Source of the DNA: Hyaloraphidium curvatum SAG 235-1
Taxonomy: Eukaryota > Fungi > Monoblepharomycota
DNA length: 64,000 nt
Direction: 5' to 3'
NCBI GenBank assembly: GCA_025558095.1
Contig: JAIVFI010000031.1
Span: 186,001-250,000 of the forward strand
Each line of letters starts with the position of its first letter. Position 1 is the first letter of the stretch. Under the pieces are notes generated by a model. That model was not told the DNA's origin and searched no databases. It worked only from the letters and a program-made list of their open reading frames with translations. The position numbers and the translations under genes are program-made. This document shows, piece by piece, positions 7,581 to 17,000 of this stretch.

Positions 7581-10500
7581 CTACTGGGAGAATGTTTGGC
7601 TCAGGAACTTTTTGAGCGCTTCCGCGACGGCATCGTTCGTGCAGCGAATGGTCAAGCGGAAGATCTTGGGGGGAGTGGTTGGCGATCAATCGCGGGACAG
7701 GGACCAGCGAACCAACCTGGCGTTCCGCATTCGGCTCTAGTCGCACGAGACACCCGACCTTCCCGGTCGAAACGGTGTTAAGGATCCCGGCGGCAACCAC
7801 GTTGTTGGGATTCGGATCCGCTGCGTGGCAGATTCCAAGTTTCACCCCCGCCATGGCCGCCTTGACCTTGCCGAGGTCGATCGGACCTGAAGATGGGAAT
7901 ATTGTCTGGACTTCCCGCGGCGGCCCGCCAATCTGCTTCCATCTGCGAGCGCGATGCCGAGTGAGCGCCGCTGGCCGCGCCACGGGCAAGCACGTACCGA
8001 TTGAAGAAGTCCGTTGGTGTCAAGTCGATGGCTTCCATAAACTTCGCGATGACGATAGGCAGATCCAGGCTATGGGTAATGGGGATCCCCGCCAGGTCGT
8101 ATGAAACAACCAGGACGGGCGGTTTGCTGGGAACGCCCGCGCACTCCACGTTGTAGGTCTGGCTGTACTGCGTCACGGGCGGTATAGAATCCTGCGACAG
8201 AGGTTGCGTGACCGAGATCTTGAGTTCCTGCGGGGACCTAACGTCGATCGCCAGGTTGAGAAGCGTCGACTGTGTCTTGTTGCCAATGAACAGAGCGATG
8301 CGGCCCAGGTGGCCGCGGTACTCGGACTTGACACCAAACTGCACGTTGTCGTCCTCGTACAGCACCCCGTTGGCCGAGGTAACCAGCTTGTTAAAGAAGC
8401 GTTCCGTGGGAGACAGCTCCGGCAGGGCTCGTTTCGGCACCGCGGGCGCGCTGGTCTCCGCAGGGAGGTCCGTGAAACCGCCATTGGCACGTCCATTCAC
8501 GGCGGGCTCGATGTGGCTGGTTCCGTTCACTTTCGCCACTGGCTGCTCCTTCGGCGGCAGAGCGGGAAGAACCTTCTCCGGTACCGCAGGTGCGTCGACA
8601 AGCGGCGGGACAGCTGGCTGCTTCCCGCGGTTCCGCAAGCTCCTCCGTTGACTGTTGGCCTCCTTGCCGCCAATAACCCAGGTCCGCTTGTCCTCGGTGT
8701 CCGCAATCTTCTTCTCCAGCCGGGAAACCAGTGCGGACTCCCTGTCCGGGAAGCCGGGCATTTCGTCGCAGACGCTCTGCAAGACCTCGTCCGTGGGCAT
8801 GCTTGCGATCGCGAGGTACTCCGAGGCCCTCTGCTGCACCTCGAGATCCAGAACGTGGCGATACTGCTGGAAGATGCGCACGACGTCCTGCTTGATCTCC
8901 GGGAACAGATTCACAAACTTCAGGTACGTCGTCAGGAGCAGGGCGCGGGTTGCCATGGAGCAGTTTCCGAACTTGGAGTGAAGGCTCGTCAGCTGTTCGA
9001 TGGGGCTCGCCCCCGGGCTCTCCACGATAAGGTGTCCAAACTCTCCCAGCACGTAGCCGCCGACTTTGACCGTTGTCTCGTGGCACGATGGGGACTTTAG
9101 GCTCTCCAGCACGGTGCGCGCGGCGTACTCCTGAAGCTCCTGGTGGTTCACAATGATCTGTATAACCCTGTGCCACACCTCGTCCCCCACGTGGTCTCCA
9201 GCGATGCTGACCAGCTGGAGCATCACGTCGACGTACCACGAGTAGTCCTCTGCCCATTTCTCCGCGAGGATGGCCAGTTTGAGCACCATCTCCTCGCGAA
9301 TGCCGTACTCCGCAACCATGAGGTACTGGAGCAGCTCGGCGACGATGCCCTTGGCATTGGTCTGGTCGCACATGCTGTAAAGCAAATCCAATGCCCTCCG
9401 GCGCACGCTGATGTCGCGGTCCTTCAGGGACAAAATGATGGCGTCCTGGTGGGTCTTGATGATCTCCAGCCCCGAGTCCGAAAACCCAGCCAGGTGCGAC
9501 ATGGTCTCCAAACCGAGGTAGCGCACGTTGGTTTCCTTCGAAGCGATGAAGCGGCAGAGGATGTTCGCCGCATCGGCCACTATCCTAGACTCGGGATCGT
9601 CTGCGATGGCGAGGCTGATGGCCTCGAACAAGACCGCGTTCTGGGCATTGCTGCTCTGCGGGTTCTTGGAGGCATCCTGGGAGCTGGTTATTATGGCCTT
9701 CAAGACCTCGTTGAGCCGCGAGCGCGTCGTAGGGTCCGCTGAGAACGCGAATGTCCGTCAGCATGTGGAGGCCGAACAGCGTCGGGAACGAAACTGACCC
9801 GGCGGAGCATAGTACTGCAACAGCCGCAGCAGCTTAACCTGCATCCACGGGTTGGGTACCTTGTAGTAAACGTAGTCTGGGGTGAATTCGTGTTCGACCA
9901 CGACCTTCAGCACCAGATTAGACACGTCCTCTGTAACTGGAACGAACCACACACCCTCCGCAACCTATCCACTGCTTTCGGGACACAGCTCACAAAAAGC
10001 TCCGGAGCTGATTGCGCGAACGCCGTGATGAGACTCGTCACGGTGGTGACCACACCCTGTAGCGGCGGCGTTAGGGACGACAGGAGTTCGAGCTGAAAGT
10101 GCCCACCAAATCTGGCTCATCTAACAGAGCGACAATCCGCGGGCTCCAATCCTTCAAAGCTGCCGCAAAAGCGTCCGGGTTCTTCCGGTACAGACGAAGA
10201 AGCGTCAGTGCTGCCTTCTTTTTCACGAACGTCCTGTTTGACCTGGCGGAACCAAGCCCGACTGGTCACGTCGACTGCCATAGCCGCTTCCAAGGCGGCC
10301 CACTTTGACACCAAAACACGCTGAACGTCATTGCCCAAACTCTCCGCCATGTCCTTGCCGGCGATGTTGGCTATGGCATGGAGAGCAAGGCACTGAAACA
10401 CCTCATTGTTGTCGTCCAGGTCCTTCCGGATAGAGTTTATGACCAGCCGCAACAGGTCGCTGTTTTCATTCAGCAGCAAAGTCACGCCCAAGTAGCCCTG

Positions 10501-10948: not shown

Positions 10949-11131
10949 GGAGCCGTGACCCGCCCGGGGGACCCTCAATGGAACGCTGGTGCTTGCTTTG
11001 TGATCGGCGCGGAGCCTGGCGGCGCGGCGCGGCGAGGGCGGGCCGCGATCGACAGAACATCAAACTCCGTGGCCCCTTGGAAGGGCGACATGGACACTCC
11101 TCTGCAAAATAATTGGCCGCTGTGTTGATTC

Positions 11132-13649
11132 ATGGGGGCCGATGGACAGAAATCGGGGTCCCAGGCGCCCCGGAAACGCGCCAAGGCAGGGAAGCTGAAT
11201 CTCTTCGACGTCATCGAGAGCCAGCTCTCTACGGTCACTGCTGGGGCGAGCGAACCTGCTGTTGGAGGTGGAAAGCCGCCCAAAGTGGCATCGGCTGCTT
11301 CAGCTCCTCGTCGTGCCGGGGAACGGCCGCCCGTGAACTCCGGAACACCACACGGAGGGCCACCGTCGGTCGTTGGTTCCCTCGCGGCATCCAAATCCAG
11401 CACGGGCCTAGTTCAGCGAATTTCCACGCTCCAGGTGGCAGCTGGAGTATGTTGCCACGGTCCAGCTGGTACCCAACCCGAGTGACCACGGCCACCACAG
11501 GATGTCGACAAGCCGGCCGTTGATAAGCACAGAGGCTTCCAGAGGGAAACACCGAGGCCCAAGAAGCTGACTGCAACCAAGCGCGCCGTGTTGCTCCAGC
11601 GTGGCCTTGCCGGGGTTTCTCCGGCAGACCGAACGGGCAGCGGATCAACGACGGGAGTGGTCGTGGACGCCGAAAAAGGAGTGCCGTCGGACACCCTCAC
11701 GTCTGATTCGGAATCTTCTGAGGCATCCGACAATGCGTCAAACGAACCGGAGGAGACGTCGGAATCGTCCCAGTCCAACTCTGAAGGTGTTGAACTCCAT
11801 CGGGATCTGGACGGTGTTGAGTTCCGGTCGGCGAGTGAGGCCGAGGGGCTGCGCATACCCGGGACCGGTGGAGCCTACGACGCGCCTAGCGCCTCGTCAA
11901 CAGGGGCGGCATCCTTGCGGCCGGTTTGGGACGGCGTCAATGCAAGGCTCGGTTGGGAGGGAGAGCGGTCGCGGCCCAGCGATGGTGGTGGCGCAAGTTC
12001 GGACCAAGATGTCCCTCTTGAAGCATCGGAAGCTACAGGCGATCCTGCGCAGCCCAAAACGCGACGGCGCCGGAAAAAGAAGGCATCTGCGGAGACTTCT
12101 TCTGGCACCAGACCTTCAGTGGGGCCCACCCATGTTCAGCACAGGTATAGTGCACCATCTCCGATGGTGCATGTTGCTGAGCATCTTACCGTGTTTCCAT
12201 AGCTACTGCACCCAAAGCCCGAGCTCTTCACACGATTCCTTGGTCCGGGATCTGCTGGACAAGCTCGTGCAGTTCCAAACTCGGAGTCGGAATTTGAATC
12301 CAGTGAAGGTAAGAGACCCGGTCGGTTAATAGCCGGTTCCTGAATCGAAACTCCACAGGCAAAGTCGAAGAGGAGAATCGTGCTCGGTCTGCGAGAGGTA
12401 CTGCGCCACTGCATGCGGGGTAAGCTGAAGAGCGTGATTGTTGCCACGAACGTGGAACCTTCGCCAGGTCCAGGTGAGACTTTTCGCAACTTGCAAGCGA
12501 AGCGATTGTGATGGGTTGCCAGCTGGAACCACGCAGTTCCTTACGTCTCTCCTTGACACCTGCACCCTCAACTCGGTTCCGGTCGTCTTCTCGATGACCC
12601 GCCGGCAGCTTGCCTCTGCCATCGTTCACACGCGGGAGGTTGCGGTGACGTGCGTGGGCATCCTGTCCTATGATGGGGCTGAGGAGCTGTTTCGGGCTGT
12701 CATATCGGGAAGCGAAGCCTTGCATGAGGATTGGCTGGGCAACTTTTGTGCTGGAGACGCAGTTCGGGAGCGAAACGAGAATCCCATTTGGAGGGCATGC
12801 TGGGAAGGTTACCGGGATCCACGCATTGTCTCGCTGTGTCTTGCGAACGGTTGGAGCCCGGATGAGGTCGACAGCGTCAACGGAGAGACTCCACTCATGG
12901 TGGCCGTGAAACGCGGCAATCGCATAGCTGCGGCAAACGTGCTGAAGTTTTCCGATCCCGATATCGGCCTGCGTAACTTCGAGGGGAAGACGGTTGTGCA
13001 CTTGGCGTGCGAGGTTGGCGTGGACTCAATATTGAAGGACATCTTTGAGAGCATAGGCAGCGCCTTGGGTAAGCCGGATTCCGACGGCCTCAAGACATTC
13101 ATTCGTCTGCTGCAGACCAAGTCGTACGCAGGCATGGCACCTGTTGATTACGCAGCAGCTGGAGGACACGCTGCATGCCTGCGCCTCCTTGCCATTTACG
13201 CCAACTCCTGGGGGTGCGTCGCCAATCTGGCCTTGGATCAAAAGGGTTACGATGGGGAGACACCAATTGCTCGGCTGGCCCGGGGAACGCCTCCCGAGTG
13301 CCTTGGTATCCTGCTTCCCTTGACCTCCTCGCTCAATGTGTTGAAGGACGCCCTGCATGTTGCGGTTGATTCTGGTGCTGTGGATGCTGCAAGGCTCATA
13401 CTGTTCCGCATGGAGGCAGTGGTAATGCTGGATACCGTGGCTGCAAACGGAGGAGGAAACACTGGCTCAAGGAAGACCGTATCTGCAAAAGACCGCGGCC
13501 AAGGACTGGCTTCCATCCTGAACATTGCAAACGATGAAAGAAGGCTCCTTCTCGATGTTGCCATGCAGGCAGAAGGAGAAGACGGTGTGATCGTAAAGCT
13601 TCTTCAAGATCATGGTGCATGCATGCCCACCACGTTGGGTGCAGAATAG
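11132..13649 (+). CDS. SECISBP2: SECIS-binding protein 2 (SBP2)-like protein (K-rich SID motif plus L7Ae domain) fused to C-terminal ankyrin repeats; predicted introns 11447-11500, 12145-12202, 12309-12358, 12474-12522
   Basis: HRGFQRETPRPKKLTATKRAVLLQR matches the SBP2 K-rich motif. YCTQ...LVRDLLDKLVQFQTRSRNLNPVK|AKSKRRIVLGLREVLRH...KLKSVIVATNVE...VPVVFSMTRRQLA...VTCVGILSYDGAEELF matches the SBP2 L7Ae module. The same exon continues into ankyrin repeats (GETPLMVAVKRG, GKTVVHLAC, APVDYAAAGGH, ALHVAVDSG). Confidence 0.85.
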
Positions 13650-14086: not shown

Positions 14087-17000
14087 TAGAATAGTATTGG
14101 TGACCCGGACCTGCCCCTGCGCTGGCTTGGCCGCTGTTACACCATCAGTTTGCTGCTAATTTGAAGTGTGTCATCGTGCATCTTTTTCATTTTCCCTGTT
14201 TTCTGTCCTTCATGGACTTTGAGATGAAGCTGGCAATGGAGTTGAGGGCCTTCTCCTTCTGCCGCCTCGCTTTGATCGTGGGCTCGAACTCCTTGATGCT
14301 AAGAGCCCAGAGCCAGGTCTCCATGTTCCACTCGCGGCCTAGTGCTTCCAATCTAGTCTGCAGCTTCTGGCGCCGCTCCGCATTTGCTGAACAGTGAAAC
14401 AGAAAGTGTTGTTCGTCTCCAATGTGCTCAGGGTCATGCTTGCACGTTCTCTGCTGCACCTCAAGTCCTTGGTGCCTGCCTGTCTCCACCTCCAGGTCGT
14501 GGGTAGAGCAGAGCAGCTTCTGGACGTCCCTCCGGTGCTTCTCCACCCGGATTAGGGATGGTCCGATGTGGCCAAAGGTCATGTCACACATCCTCCAAAA
14601 GTGCAGTTTGTCGTTGTCCTTGAGCCTCTGGGCATTGATCTCCCTGAACTTGCCCTTCACAAGATTCTCCACAGTCTCCTTGGCCCATGAAAGAGTGTCC
14701 TTCTCCCATGCCACATCTCCCTCCCCTCCTCTCCACCATAGTATACAAGTAGTTCCCCCCCCAGGAAGGCAGCCCAGTTCCAGCACCCCTTCAGTGCCTC
14801 GATCTTGAGCTCCTTGTAGAGCAGTTACAATGCAGGGTCAGCTGTTTTGATGCGCATGAGGAACTTGAGAGCCGACTCATGGTCATGAACTGCAAGAGGG
14901 TACTGGCCAGTGATCGCATACAGACAAGCCAAGGAGGTTGATTTGGGCTGATGAGGGACAGCACGAAGGGCCATGCATGTCACTTTGTCCCTGGTGCTTT
15001 CCCCGGCAAGGTACTCCTCCTTCGGCATCTCAACAATGAATGGGTTCCCATATTGGCCCACCGCCTTGACCTTCGTGTTGTAGAGCTTGAGCTGGACGTC
15101 AGGACTCATCCCAGCCTGCTCCCTGATGTCGCAGAGCCAGAGCCCATAAGCAGCATTCATCTTGGCCTCCCTGCCATGCACATGGTCCTTGCTCCGCCCA
15201 GTTGATGTGAGCTGGTACCCCAGAAGCTTGAAGCTGTCGACCCTCTTCAGCTCCTGGCCCCTGTACAGGAGCTTCAACGGTGGGGTATCCTCCTGGCCAT
15301 CCACTCTGTTTTGCTGACGTTGATCTCCAGCCCATTGGCATTGGCATATGCAGACAAAAGATCCAGCTGCATCTTGGCATCTTTCACCGTCTTCGAGATC
15401 AAAGTGGTGTTGTCTGCCAAGAACAAAGCCAGCAAGCTGACCATCCTTTATTTCCTGATCCTCCTCTTCCTCAAACACCATGCCCAGATCCATCCCTTTT
15501 GCACCATTGGCCTCCATGAAAGCAGTGATGTCGTTGATGAACAAGATGAAAAACAGCGATGAGAGGGTGGGGTTCCCCCTGCTTCACTCCAGTTAGGAAC
15601 TTGATGAAGTCCGACTTTGTGCCGTCCTCATCCCGGAGCCTTCCCCACACCGGACCCGCCCAAACGCCATCTCGAACATGTCAACAATCTGTTTGGGTGT
15701 GTACACCCATCTCCTCCAGCTTCTTCCACAACCTCGGGTGTTCCACCGTGTCAAAAGCCTTTGTGAATTCTACAAACACCATGATCAGCTTCTCCTTGCA
15801 TGCCTTGGCCAACGAGAAGAGTGCCTCAGCGAGAAACACTGCATGAAGGGTTGACCTCCGTGCCTGGAATCCAAACTGCGAGCCTTCCAGCAGCTTGTTG
15901 CACTCAGCCCAGGGAGCTAGCCGAGCGTTACAGACCAGCAGGGAAAAGACCTTCTCCAGCGTCCTCTCTATGCTGATGCCTCGGTAGTTGCCAGCCACGT
16001 TCTTGGGCCCCTTCTTGTGCAGCATCACCAGCAGTGTCTGGCCCCAGTCATCCATCTTGACGCCATTGAGCACGTCGTTGAGGAAGTTGACAACAGCTTG
16101 CTTCAGTACTGCAGTCCCGTACTTGACGAACTCGAGCCGGATCCCATCCTCATCCTTTGCCTTGCCGTTGGGGGCCTTCTTCAAGACCCTCTCCAGCTCC
16201 TTGAGGGTGATGGGGCGCAGCAGGTCTCCAGAAGGCGTGATCGTGGCCTTGGGAAGTGGTGGAAACGTGAGCCTTGGATCCTCCTCGATCTTGGTCACGT
16301 ACTCGGCGCTGGCGACCATCTCCATGTGGCGCACCAGCTCTGCAAAGGGCACGGGGTTGCCCTTGCGCCTTGCGTGAGCCTTTCCAAGCAGCTGGTAGTA
16401 CCCCTTAGGCTCTCGCCTGAAGAGTCGCTCTAGCAGCTTGGAGTTCTCTCGCTCAGCAACCCTCCGCATCCTCTTCTCCAACTTCTTCCGCTCCTTCTCC
16501 AGCTCCCGCGTCTTCCCCTGGTACTCCTTCTTCCACTCGTCTTTCTCCATGAGGGATCGCAGCTCAAGAAGGCGTGACAGCTTCCGATCGATCTCGACCC
16601 TCTCTGCCGAGTCCGCAAAGCCGTTGAGGAACTTGTCCGCCTCTTCGTGTACGCTGACCTTGTCGTACTTCTTCTTCGCGACCTTGTTCACCACTGCCAT
16701 GATCTGGATGAGCCGGTTGCACTTGTCGGATCCAGCTTGAAGTTGCTCGTACTCTTGCATTGCCTCCTTGACCCAGGGCTCATCGTAGAGGTTTCGCATT
16801 ATTGCGAGGAAGTGGAAGTCGCACGGCACGGGCTTGCAGTGCGGCTTGTTCTCTTTCGCAGCTGGTCGCACGAGGTTGGCCTTGATGGTCAGGCTCAGGG
16901 CCATGTGGTCTGAGGTGACGACCCAGCCTTCCTTCACAAATGCAAGCTGGGTGACCGTCCCGTAGCGGCTCTGCGGCACGATTGCGTAGTCCAAGGTGCT

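What the first reader, a model, noticed from the sequence alone, without database searches (positions are those of the whole stretch)
11132..13649. Fungal-type genome encoding a SECIS-binding protein 2 fused to ankyrin repeats
Seen: both SBP2 hallmarks are present, the K-rich RGFQRETPRPKKLTATKRAVL motif and the YCxQ...LVQFQxR...RRIVLGLREV L7Ae module. About 6 ankyrin repeats follow in the same exon with no stop. Known: SBP2 drives selenocysteine insertion at UGA, and most fungi lost this pathway, which survives in only a few early-branching lineages. Animal SBP2 has no ankyrin repeats. Inference: this organism probably makes selenoproteins, and the ankyrin module could be a new interface to eEFSec or the ribosome. 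Alternatively SBP2 has been repurposed.
Basis: partly seen in the sequence, partly recalled or inferred. Interest (0 to 1): 0.8.

Follow-up and report, generated by a model that had tools for sequence, protein, structure and literature searches.

The report
Fungal SBP2 with ankyrin tail
This is the gene for the selenocysteine-insertion factor SBP2 of the early-branching fungus Hyaloraphidium curvatum. It ends in an ankyrin-repeat domain that all detectable selenocysteine-using fungi share, that animal and choanoflagellate SBP2 lack, and that no searchable paper describes.

Summary
Window 11132-13649 (+) holds a five-exon gene of about 768 aa with four GT..AG introns of 49-58 nt. It encodes an SBP2 Sec-incorporation-domain (SID) motif and an L7Ae RNA-binding domain colinear with human SBP2 residues 632-769. 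About seven ankyrin (ANK) repeats follow in the same exon as the C-terminal half of L7Ae.

The genome is Hyaloraphidium curvatum (Monoblepharidomycetes), so "fungal" is right. It also carries tRNA-Sec, SepSecS, an SPS2 with an in-frame UGA (GUGCK), eEFSec, a probable PSTK and one canonical SECIS. Selenocysteine use is therefore well supported and "repurposed SBP2" is not.

The fusion is not peculiar to this genome. Three syntenic relatives have the same exons. L7Ae+ANK proteins also occur in Gonapodya (two species), Thamnocephalis, Syncephalis fuscata, Bifiguratus and, with a marginal ANK signal, Smittium. Animal, choanoflagellate and jakobid SBP2 end shortly after L7Ae. This looks like one ancient fungal acquisition.

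Several of these proteins are already public, one named "SBP2-like". Selenocysteine use in this fungal class is published. No searchable paper mentions the ANK domain.

What the ANK domain does is inferred only. No RNA evidence could be obtained, and the joined spliced protein was never built or searched.

The parts
11132..11446 (+). Exon 1, the N-terminal region. It starts at the first ATG after an in-frame stop. The motif NLFDVIESQL is conserved in relatives. An alternative donor would end the exon at 11434.
11447..11500 (+). Intron 1: 54 nt, GTATGT...CACAG, a multiple of three, and it contains the in-frame TGA at 11483-11485. An alternative donor GTGGCA at 11435 would give 66 nt.
   Evidence: inferred, no RNA data
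11501..12144 (+). Exon 2: a low-complexity, acidic and Ser-rich region that carries the SID motif and a basic patch.
11519..11605 (+). Conserved SID motif VDKHRGFQRETPRPKKLTATKRAVLLQRG.
   Evidence: aligns to insect SBP2 (RHRGKKRETPKKRHMTRLKRAIL; RGKQREVPKAKKPTPLKQIIL) and to Thamnocephalis and Bifiguratus SBP2
12056..12082 (+). Arg/Lys patch KTRRRRKKK just upstream of the RNA-binding domain. L019 has PRRRRRKK at the same place.
12203..12308 (+). Exon 3: start of the RNA-binding domain (YCTQ...LVQFQTR...NPVK). It aligns to human SBP2 632-666.
12359..12473 (+). Exon 4: N-terminal half of L7Ae (AKSKRRIVLGLREV...). It aligns to human SBP2 667-699.
12523..12752 (+). First part of exon 5: C-terminal half of L7Ae plus its last long helix with invariant W70. 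It aligns to human SBP2 710-769.
12774..13619 (+). Ankyrin-repeat domain in the same exon: about seven helix pairs, with an inserted helix and one disordered loop.
13647..13649 (+). Stop codon TAA.

Best explanation
This is the single-copy SBP2 (SECIS-binding protein 2) gene of the chytrid-grade fungus Hyaloraphidium curvatum. Shown: it has five exons and encodes about 768 aa. It contains a SID motif and an SBP2-type L7Ae RNA-binding domain. A solenoid of about seven ankyrin repeats starts about ten residues after the last L7Ae helix, in the same exon. Shown: the genome encodes the rest of the Sec pathway, so the protein most likely does the normal SBP2 job. That job, from established knowledge, is to bind the kink-turn of SECIS elements in selenoprotein mRNAs and help eEFSec deliver Sec-tRNASec to UGA. 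Shown: the ANK domain is aligned position by position across Sec-using fungi of Chytridiomycota, Zoopagomycota and Mucoromycota. It is absent from animal, choanoflagellate and jakobid SBP2. It was therefore probably acquired once, early in fungi, where metazoan SBP2 has only a short C-terminal tail. Inferred: the ANK solenoid is held in a fixed position against L7Ae. It would serve as a protein-binding platform that docks or stabilises the SBP2-SECIS complex on the translating ribosome or on a pathway partner. Candidates are a small-subunit protein such as eS31, eEFSec, or an mRNP assembly factor.
For: Identity. Exons 3, 4 and 5 hit human SBP2 (7zjw_B) colinearly at 632-666, 667-699 and 710-769. 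It is the best hit for all three, and significant for exons 4 and 5 (E 1.4e-5 and 1.1e-5). Exon 3 alone is not significant (E 0.061). The next best hit to exon 4 is eL30 at only E 0.09. The SID motif aligns with insect and fungal SBP2. The gene is single copy, and five other L7Ae loci exist in the genome.

Sec pathway. tRNA-Sec scores 78 bits in Rfam and ARAGORN calls it SeC(tca). SepSecS is present. SPS2 has an in-frame TGA in GUGCK. The eEFSec domains III and IV lie at C1:403987-404920. A probable PSTK is present. One canonical SECIS was found.

Organism. The neighbouring AP-2 alpha ORF is 100% identical to an NCBI H. curvatum protein.

Fusion. One open frame runs from 12438 to 13649. The exon order is conserved in L019, L029 and L030, with the same adaptin neighbour. 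L7Ae+ANK is found in Gonapodya sp. KAJ3338991 (named SBP2-like), G. prolifera KXS16090, Thamnocephalis RKP10265, Bifiguratus OZJ04102 and Syncephalis fuscata. Smittium PVV00852 has L7Ae with only a marginal Ank_2 score. An intron-free 436-aa version is on metagenome contig L031. Conserved junction and ANK motifs are visible in alignment A3. The AF2 model of Gonapodya L7Ae+ANK has pTM 0.77 over 486 aa. Non-fungal SBP2 hits end within about 80-100 aa of L7Ae.
Against: There is no transcript evidence. The intron 1 donor is ambiguous between 11447 and 11435. No binding partner of the ANK domain was tested. I could not inspect the interface in the models, so rigid attachment is suggested only by the high pTM. 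The survey of non-fungal SBP2 covers only what a fungal L7Ae half-domain profile can detect, so ANK-bearing SBP2 outside fungi is not excluded. The lineages of P0182 and P0194 are unknown.
Confidence: 0.85

Rival explanations
1. The ANK domain takes part in choosing the RNA target. It would either contact RNA directly or recruit an extra RNA-binding factor. Fungal SBP2 would then recognise SECIS elements that differ from the canonical form.
For: Mariotti et al. (bioRxiv 10.1101/314781) report that many fungal selenoprotein genes lack recognisable SECIS elements. They link this to a highly divergent SBP2. Here only one Rfam SECIS_1 match was found in 32 Mb. None was found within 1.5 kb downstream of the Sec-encoding SPS2. 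The ANK domain is the one large feature specific to fungal SBP2.
Against: Ankyrin repeats are mostly protein-binding modules (established knowledge). One fully canonical AUGA...AAA...GA SECIS does exist in this genome. The SBP2-like sequence of L7Ae is retained. Failure of the Rfam model is weak evidence that canonical SECIS elements are absent.
Confidence: 0.25
2. The ANK domain has a regulatory or localisation role unrelated to decoding. Examples are stability control, nuclear-cytoplasmic shuttling, or tethering to a membrane or the cytoskeleton. It would take over the regulatory functions of the metazoan N- and C-terminal extensions.
For: SBP2 regions outside the SID and RNA-binding domain are variable between lineages and are thought to be regulatory (PMC2746813). 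The fungal protein lacks the long metazoan N-terminal domain.
Against: The ANK starts immediately after the last L7Ae helix. The junction motif (R.E.P.W.A...GY..P) is among the best-conserved parts of the protein. This fits a structural unit with the RNA-binding domain better than a loosely tethered regulatory module.
Confidence: 0.2
3. The fusion is an artefact. Two adjacent genes, SBP2 and an ankyrin gene, merely look continuous, or the transcript ends before the repeats.
For: No RNA data could be obtained. Prokaryote-style gene callers split off the ANK part as a separate 346-352 aa protein starting at an internal Met (P0001, P0003, P0127, P0128).
Against: Those internal-Met 'proteins' begin inside the L7Ae domain at MTRRQLA, so a separate gene would truncate L7Ae. 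L7Ae and ANK share one open frame in more than ten species of three fungal phyla. These include independently annotated full-length models and an intron-free 436-aa ORF. Conservation runs straight across the junction.
Confidence: 0.03

Closest known systems
Human/rat SBP2 (SECISBP2; PDB 7ZJW/7ZJX chain B)
   Same: It has a SID motif upstream and an L7Ae RNA-binding domain. The YCxQ...FQxR, KxKRRxVLGLREV and GI(F/L)SYDGA blocks are colinear with residues 632-769. It co-occurs with tRNA-Sec, eEFSec, SepSecS, PSTK and SPS2.
   Different: Human SBP2 has a roughly 400-aa N-terminal extension and ends about 85 aa after L7Ae, with no ankyrin repeats. The fungal protein has a short N-terminus and about 290 aa of ANK solenoid after L7Ae.
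SBP2 of other Sec-using fungi: Gonapodya sp. JEL0774 KAJ3338991.1 ('SBP2-like'), G. prolifera KXS16090.1, Thamnocephalis RKP10265.1, Bifiguratus OZJ04102.1, Smittium PVV00852.1, Syncephalis KAI9594998.1
   Same: All have L7Ae followed at once by ankyrin repeats. They share the junction motif and the last-repeat motif (LN..D..G..AL.WA). The window protein is an orthologue, 22-28% identical over the last exon.
   Different: Lengths and N-terminal regions vary, and inserts within the ANK region differ. The Bifiguratus model is merged with an EFR3 gene. The Smittium ANK signal is marginal (Ank_2 29.3 bits against a 27.3 cut-off, no significant single stretch). The Hyaloraphidium clade has ALD(L/W)A where the others have ALWWA.
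Choanoflagellate and jakobid SBP2 (Didymoeca EP00039_P000461, Stephanoeca EP00041_P018904, Stygiella EP01028_P001000)
   Same: An SBP2-type L7Ae domain is detected by the same profile.
   Different: The L7Ae domain lies within about 10-40 residues of the C-terminus, so there is no ANK domain.
Other L7Ae-family proteins (eL30, eL8/L7A, Snu13/15.5K, Nhp2)
   Same: They share the kink-turn-binding L7Ae fold. Pfam PF01248 matches exon 4.
   Different: Their PDB scores are far weaker (eL30 E 0.09 against SBP2 E 1.4e-5 for exon 4, and no hit at all for exons 3 and 5). They are small single-domain proteins. The genome has separate loci for them.

Membership tests
SBP2 / SECISBP2 | An L7Ae RNA-binding domain of the SBP2 subtype, not eL30, Snu13 or Nhp2 | tested here: met
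   Three consecutive exons match human SBP2 7zjw_B at 632-666, 667-699 and 710-769 as the best hit. Exons 4 and 5 are significant (E 1.4e-5, 1.1e-5); exon 3 alone is not (E 0.061). eL30 reaches only E 0.09 on one exon. Pfam PF01248 scores E 5e-7.
SBP2 / SECISBP2 | A Sec incorporation domain (SID) motif upstream of the RNA-binding domain | tested here: met
   Exon 2 residues 7-35 align to insect SBP2 about 100-125 aa upstream of their L7Ae, and to Thamnocephalis and Bifiguratus SBP2. The E-values (1e-4 to 3e-5) come from a 13-sequence database, so the evidence is moderate.
SBP2 / SECISBP2 | The conserved glycine of the L7Ae motif (VLGLREV), required for SECIS binding in rat SBP2 (recalled from the literature, not checked here) | tested here: met
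   RRIVLGLREV can be read directly at 12368-12397.
SBP2 / SECISBP2 | Occurs in genomes that have the Sec machinery and selenoprotein genes | tested here: met
   tRNA-Sec, SepSecS, SPS2 with in-frame UGA, eEFSec domains III and IV, probable PSTK, one SECIS.
SBP2 / SECISBP2 | Binds SECIS RNA and supports UGA-to-Sec recoding | not testable with these tools
   This needs EMSA and an in vitro or in vivo Sec-insertion assay.
Ankyrin-repeat domain | Sequence match to ANK profiles above the curated cut-off | tested here: met
   Ank_2 scores 66 bits against a cut-off of 27.3, and Ank, Ank_3, Ank_4 and Ank_5 also pass. PDB ankyrin-1/2 reach E 7e-20.
Ankyrin-repeat domain | A stacked helix-turn-helix solenoid fold | tested here: met
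   The AF2 model has pLDDT 85.7 and about seven helix pairs. Foldseek finds MIB1 ANK, ankyrin-1 and gankyrin (TM 0.81).
Fungal SBP2-ANK architecture | ANK domain directly C-terminal to SBP2-type L7Ae in one polypeptide, conserved in orthologues | tested here: met
   The architecture is found in six named fungal species with both domains detected, plus two unnamed contigs and three syntenic relatives. Smittium is marginal for ANK, and the short Syncephalis plumigaleata fragment lacks a Pfam L7Ae hit.
Fungal SBP2-ANK architecture | Expressed as a single mRNA and protein | not testable with these tools

The most novel reading that the evidence does not exclude
The C-terminal ankyrin domain is an ancestral, defining innovation of fungal SBP2 that changed how the SBP2-SECIS complex is recognised or docked. 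It co-evolved with divergent fungal SECIS elements. This would explain why many fungal selenoprotein mRNAs show no recognisable SECIS, and it would give a handle for finding them, for example by CLIP with the ANK-bearing protein.
Probability: 0.25. Interest if true: 0.7.

Novelty: new variant of a known kind. Interest (0 to 1): 0.5.

Why it matters
Selenocysteine use in fungi was recognised only in 2018-2019. The authors of that work could not find SECIS elements for many fungal selenoprotein genes and noted a very divergent SBP2. This report shows that every detectable fungal SBP2 carries a conserved ankyrin solenoid attached directly to its RNA-binding domain, and that animal and choanoflagellate SBP2 lack it. 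That gives a concrete structural difference which can be tested for its role in fungal Sec decoding. It also gives a simple sequence signature (L7Ae+ANK) for spotting Sec-using fungi in genomes and metagenomes. It matters for attempts to rebuild Sec insertion in yeast with fungal parts. In other respects the gene is an ordinary member of a known pathway in a lineage where that pathway was already reported.

Tried and rejected

2. The first eEFSec guess was wrong. The best genomic hit to the bacterial selB model (C3:473603) is mitochondrial IF-2. The other selB hits are EF-Tu, EF-1 alpha, eRF3/HBS1-like, eIF5B and eIF2 gamma. The real eEFSec was found with PF21131 and PF21208.

3. PF08433 (KTI12) found only one locus, which is probably KTI12 proper. 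PSTK came from TIGR03575 at low score and is called "probable".

4. Three searches returned only generic ankyrin proteins: the ESM Atlas feature search of the last exon, the PDB sequence search of the whole last exon, and the word-based search with Gonapodya SBP2 residues 400-720.

5. No annotated full-length H. curvatum SBP2 protein was recovered. The length window of the word search excludes it for a 374-aa query.

6. Exon 2 has no significant PDB match.

7. The in-frame TGA at 11483-11485 was considered as a possible Sec codon or a gene break. I rejected both. It lies in a 54-nt GTATGT..CAG intron, and relatives need an intron at the same place because the frame changes there.

8. dN/dS was not computed, because the orthologues are only 38-45% identical and synonymous sites are saturated.

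9. The joined spliced protein was never built, searched or folded. Its length (2307 nt, 768 aa) comes from coordinate arithmetic only.

10. Mariotti et al. 2019 (PMC6551623) is not held, and no supplement of the preprint is held. I therefore cannot exclude that their supplementary SBP2 tree or alignment mentions the ANK region.
Full report
**What is at the coordinates**

The frame changes are explained by short GT..AG introns:

| Feature | Coordinates | Notes |
|---|---|---|
| Exon 1 | 11132-11446 | Starts at the first ATG after an in-frame stop |
| Intron 1 | 11447-11500 | 54 nt, GTATGT donor; an in-phase alternative donor lies at 11435 |
| Exon 2 | 11501-12144 | |
| Intron 2 | 12145-12202 | 58 nt |
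| Exon 3 | 12203-12308 | |
| Intron 3 | 12309-12358 | 50 nt |
| Exon 4 | 12359-12473 | |
| Intron 4 | 12474-12522 | 49 nt |
| Exon 5 | 12523-13649 | Ends with the stop codon |

By coordinate arithmetic the coding sequence is 2307 nt, or 768 aa. The in-frame TGA at 11483-11485 lies in intron 1. I never built, searched or folded the joined protein.

**Is it SBP2?**

- Pfam finds Ribosomal_L7Ae on exon 4 (E 5e-7) and ankyrin families on exon 5 (Ank_2 E 4.6e-18).
- Against all PDB sequences, exons 3, 4 and 5 hit human SBP2 (7zjw_B) colinearly. The matched residues are 632-666 (E 0.06, best hit), 667-699 (E 1.4e-5) and 710-769 (profile E 1.1e-5, the only hit below E 0.1).
- The next best match to exon 4 is eL30 at E 0.09.
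- The exon 3/4 boundary falls exactly between human K666 and A667.
- The upstream motif VDKHRGFQRETPRPKKLTATKRAVL aligns with the conserved motif of insect SBP2 (for example RHRGKKRETPKKRHMTRLKRAIL), which lies about 100-125 residues before their L7Ae. It also aligns with Thamnocephalis and Bifiguratus SBP2.
- This corresponds to the Sec incorporation domain (SID) as defined in PMC2746813. A separate KTRRRRKKK patch lies at 12056-12082.
- The gene is single copy in the genome. Five other L7Ae-family loci exist.

**Which organism, and does it use selenocysteine?**

The divergently transcribed neighbour, AP-2 alpha (7781-9703, minus strand), is 100% identical to an NCBI protein of Hyaloraphidium curvatum. 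The next named relatives are Gonapodya at 58%. The genome is therefore fungal, of the class Monoblepharidomycetes.

The whole assembly (31.9 Mb, 55 contigs) contains the following:

| Component | Evidence |
|---|---|
| tRNA-Sec | 78 bits in Rfam; ARAGORN calls SeC(tca) |
| SepSecS | Pfam match over cut-off |
| SPS2 (selenophosphate synthetase) | Active site reads G-TGA-GCK, so it is itself a selenoprotein |
| eEFSec | Domains III and IV at C1:403987-404920 |
| PSTK (probable) | Walker A and DDNMYY..MR motifs; best family hits are PSTK, below cut-off |
| Canonical SECIS | One AUGA...AAA...GA element |

My first eEFSec candidate was wrong. It is mitochondrial IF-2.

Selenocysteine use in Gonapodya and a few other early-diverging fungi is published (bioRxiv 10.1101/314781). 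Amses et al. mapped the trait over a taxon set that includes Hyaloraphidium (PMC9457484). Other first-stage notes on this genome flag candidate selenoproteins; I did not test them.

**Is the fusion real?**

- The C-terminal half of L7Ae and the repeats lie in one open frame (12438-13649) and one exon.
- An AlphaFold2 model of that exon, built on a 13-sequence alignment, has mean pLDDT 85.7 and pTM 0.80. It shows about seven ANK helix pairs, one inserted helix and one disordered loop.
- Foldseek returns only ankyrin-repeat proteins.
- Three orthologous contigs, one from an ENA metagenome (L019) and two from Logan assemblies (L029, L030), carry all five exons in the same order. Exons 3 and 4 match end to end, and the adaptin neighbour is the same.
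- Last-exon identity is 40-45% by tblastn, and the frame stays open throughout.
- No RNA evidence could be obtained. Transcription as one unit is therefore inferred from conservation.

**How widespread is it?**

I searched a profile of the L7Ae C-terminal half (85 positions, no ANK) against 1.84 billion representative proteins. It returned 98 hits.

Hits with more than about 150 residues after L7Ae carry ankyrin repeats at that position, with one exception (P0132, an unnamed JGI metagenome protein with no ANK hit):

- Gonapodya sp. JEL0774, which NCBI names "SBP2-like"
- Gonapodya prolifera
- Thamnocephalis sphaerospora
- Syncephalis fuscata; a 249-aa S. plumigaleata fragment has the ANK but no Pfam L7Ae hit
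- Bifiguratus adelaidae, in a gene model merged with EFR3
- Smittium megazygosporum, with a marginal ANK signal (Ank_2 29.3 bits, cut-off 27.3)
- Two unnamed contigs, one of them an intron-free 436-aa ORF

The species named in the preprint as Sec-using (Bifiguratus, Gonapodya, Smittium relatives) are among them.

Hits from animals end within about 80-100 residues of L7Ae and have no ANK. These include molluscs, insects, a crustacean, a horseshoe crab and a lungfish. The choanoflagellates Didymoeca and Stephanoeca and the jakobid Stygiella end within about 10-40 residues.

Alignment A3 shows positional conservation across the junction (R.E.P.W.A...GY..P.I...C..NGW..D..D...G.TPL) and in the last repeat (LN..D..G..AL.WA). 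This argues for one acquisition before the three fungal phyla diverged.

A model of Gonapodya L7Ae+ANK has pTM 0.77 over 486 residues. That is compatible with a fixed orientation of the two domains. I could not inspect the interface.

**Mechanism**

- Shown: an intact SBP2 core in a genome with the complete pathway.
- From established knowledge: SBP2 binds the SECIS kink-turn. [quoted passage not shown]
- Inferred: the fungal ANK solenoid sits directly after the last L7Ae helix, where metazoan SBP2 has only a short tail. It is most likely a protein-binding platform that helps dock or stabilise this complex.
- A more novel reading is that it is tied to the unusual or unrecognisable SECIS elements of fungi. 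Only one Rfam SECIS match exists in this genome, and none lies downstream of SPS2. The preprint notes the same problem and links it to a divergent SBP2.
- A purely regulatory role is also possible. An artefactual fusion is very unlikely.

**Novelty and score**

SBP2 and selenocysteine use in this fungal class are known, and several SBP2-ANK proteins are already deposited. I found no paper that mentions SBP2 or SECIS-binding protein together with ankyrin in this sense. However, the published version of Mariotti et al. and its supplements were not available.

I rate this a new variant of a known kind. It is moderately interesting to specialists because it is conserved, lineage-specific and directly testable.

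Noticed in passing
G000:C2:990953-991939 (-), loci L007/L008: The selenophosphate synthetase (SPS2) gene has an in-frame TGA in the active-site motif ...AELKG-TGA-GCKV.... No Rfam SECIS match at E<=1 lies within about 1.5 kb downstream.
   Followed up: partly
G000:C30:527668-527729 (-), locus L006 1501-1562: This is the only Rfam SECIS_1 match over the gathering score in the 32-Mb genome (36.2 bits, canonical AUGA...AAA...GA, 82% G+C). The gene it serves was not identified.
   Followed up: no
window 14187-15544 (-): Two long open frames (199 and 239 aa) lie directly downstream of the SBP2 gene. From their sequence they look like fragments of a non-LTR retrotransposon or reverse transcriptase. 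The syntenic relatives have a C2H2 zinc-finger gene here instead.
   Followed up: no
window 10950-11131: The AP-2 alpha gene (minus strand) and the SBP2 gene (plus strand) are transcribed divergently, with an intergenic region of only about 200 bp. This head-to-head pairing is kept in L019, L029 and L030.
   Followed up: partly
P0147 (Bifiguratus adelaidae OZJ04102.1, 1458 aa): The deposited gene model joins an EFR3 domain (residues 11-355) to the SBP2-ANK protein. This is probably a merge of two neighbouring genes by the annotation pipeline.
   Followed up: no
L031 6001-7311 (+) (ENA ERZ25039595 contig_12801, 367 kb): An intron-free 436-aa L7Ae+ANK protein sits in a gene-dense eukaryotic metagenome contig, next to an intron-free CPSF73. 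The lineage is unknown, possibly a compact-genome fungus that uses selenocysteine.
   Followed up: partly
G000:C3:473603-474418 (+), locus L011 1336-3147: The best genomic hit to the bacterial SelB model is mitochondrial IF-2, not eEFSec. This is a trap for automated Sec-machinery surveys.
   Followed up: yes
L019 1480-1570; L029 3733-3860; L030 3898-4001: All three relatives have an extra intron that splits the SID motif between PRPKK and LTATKRAV. The Hyaloraphidium gene has lost it, or the others gained it.
   Followed up: partly
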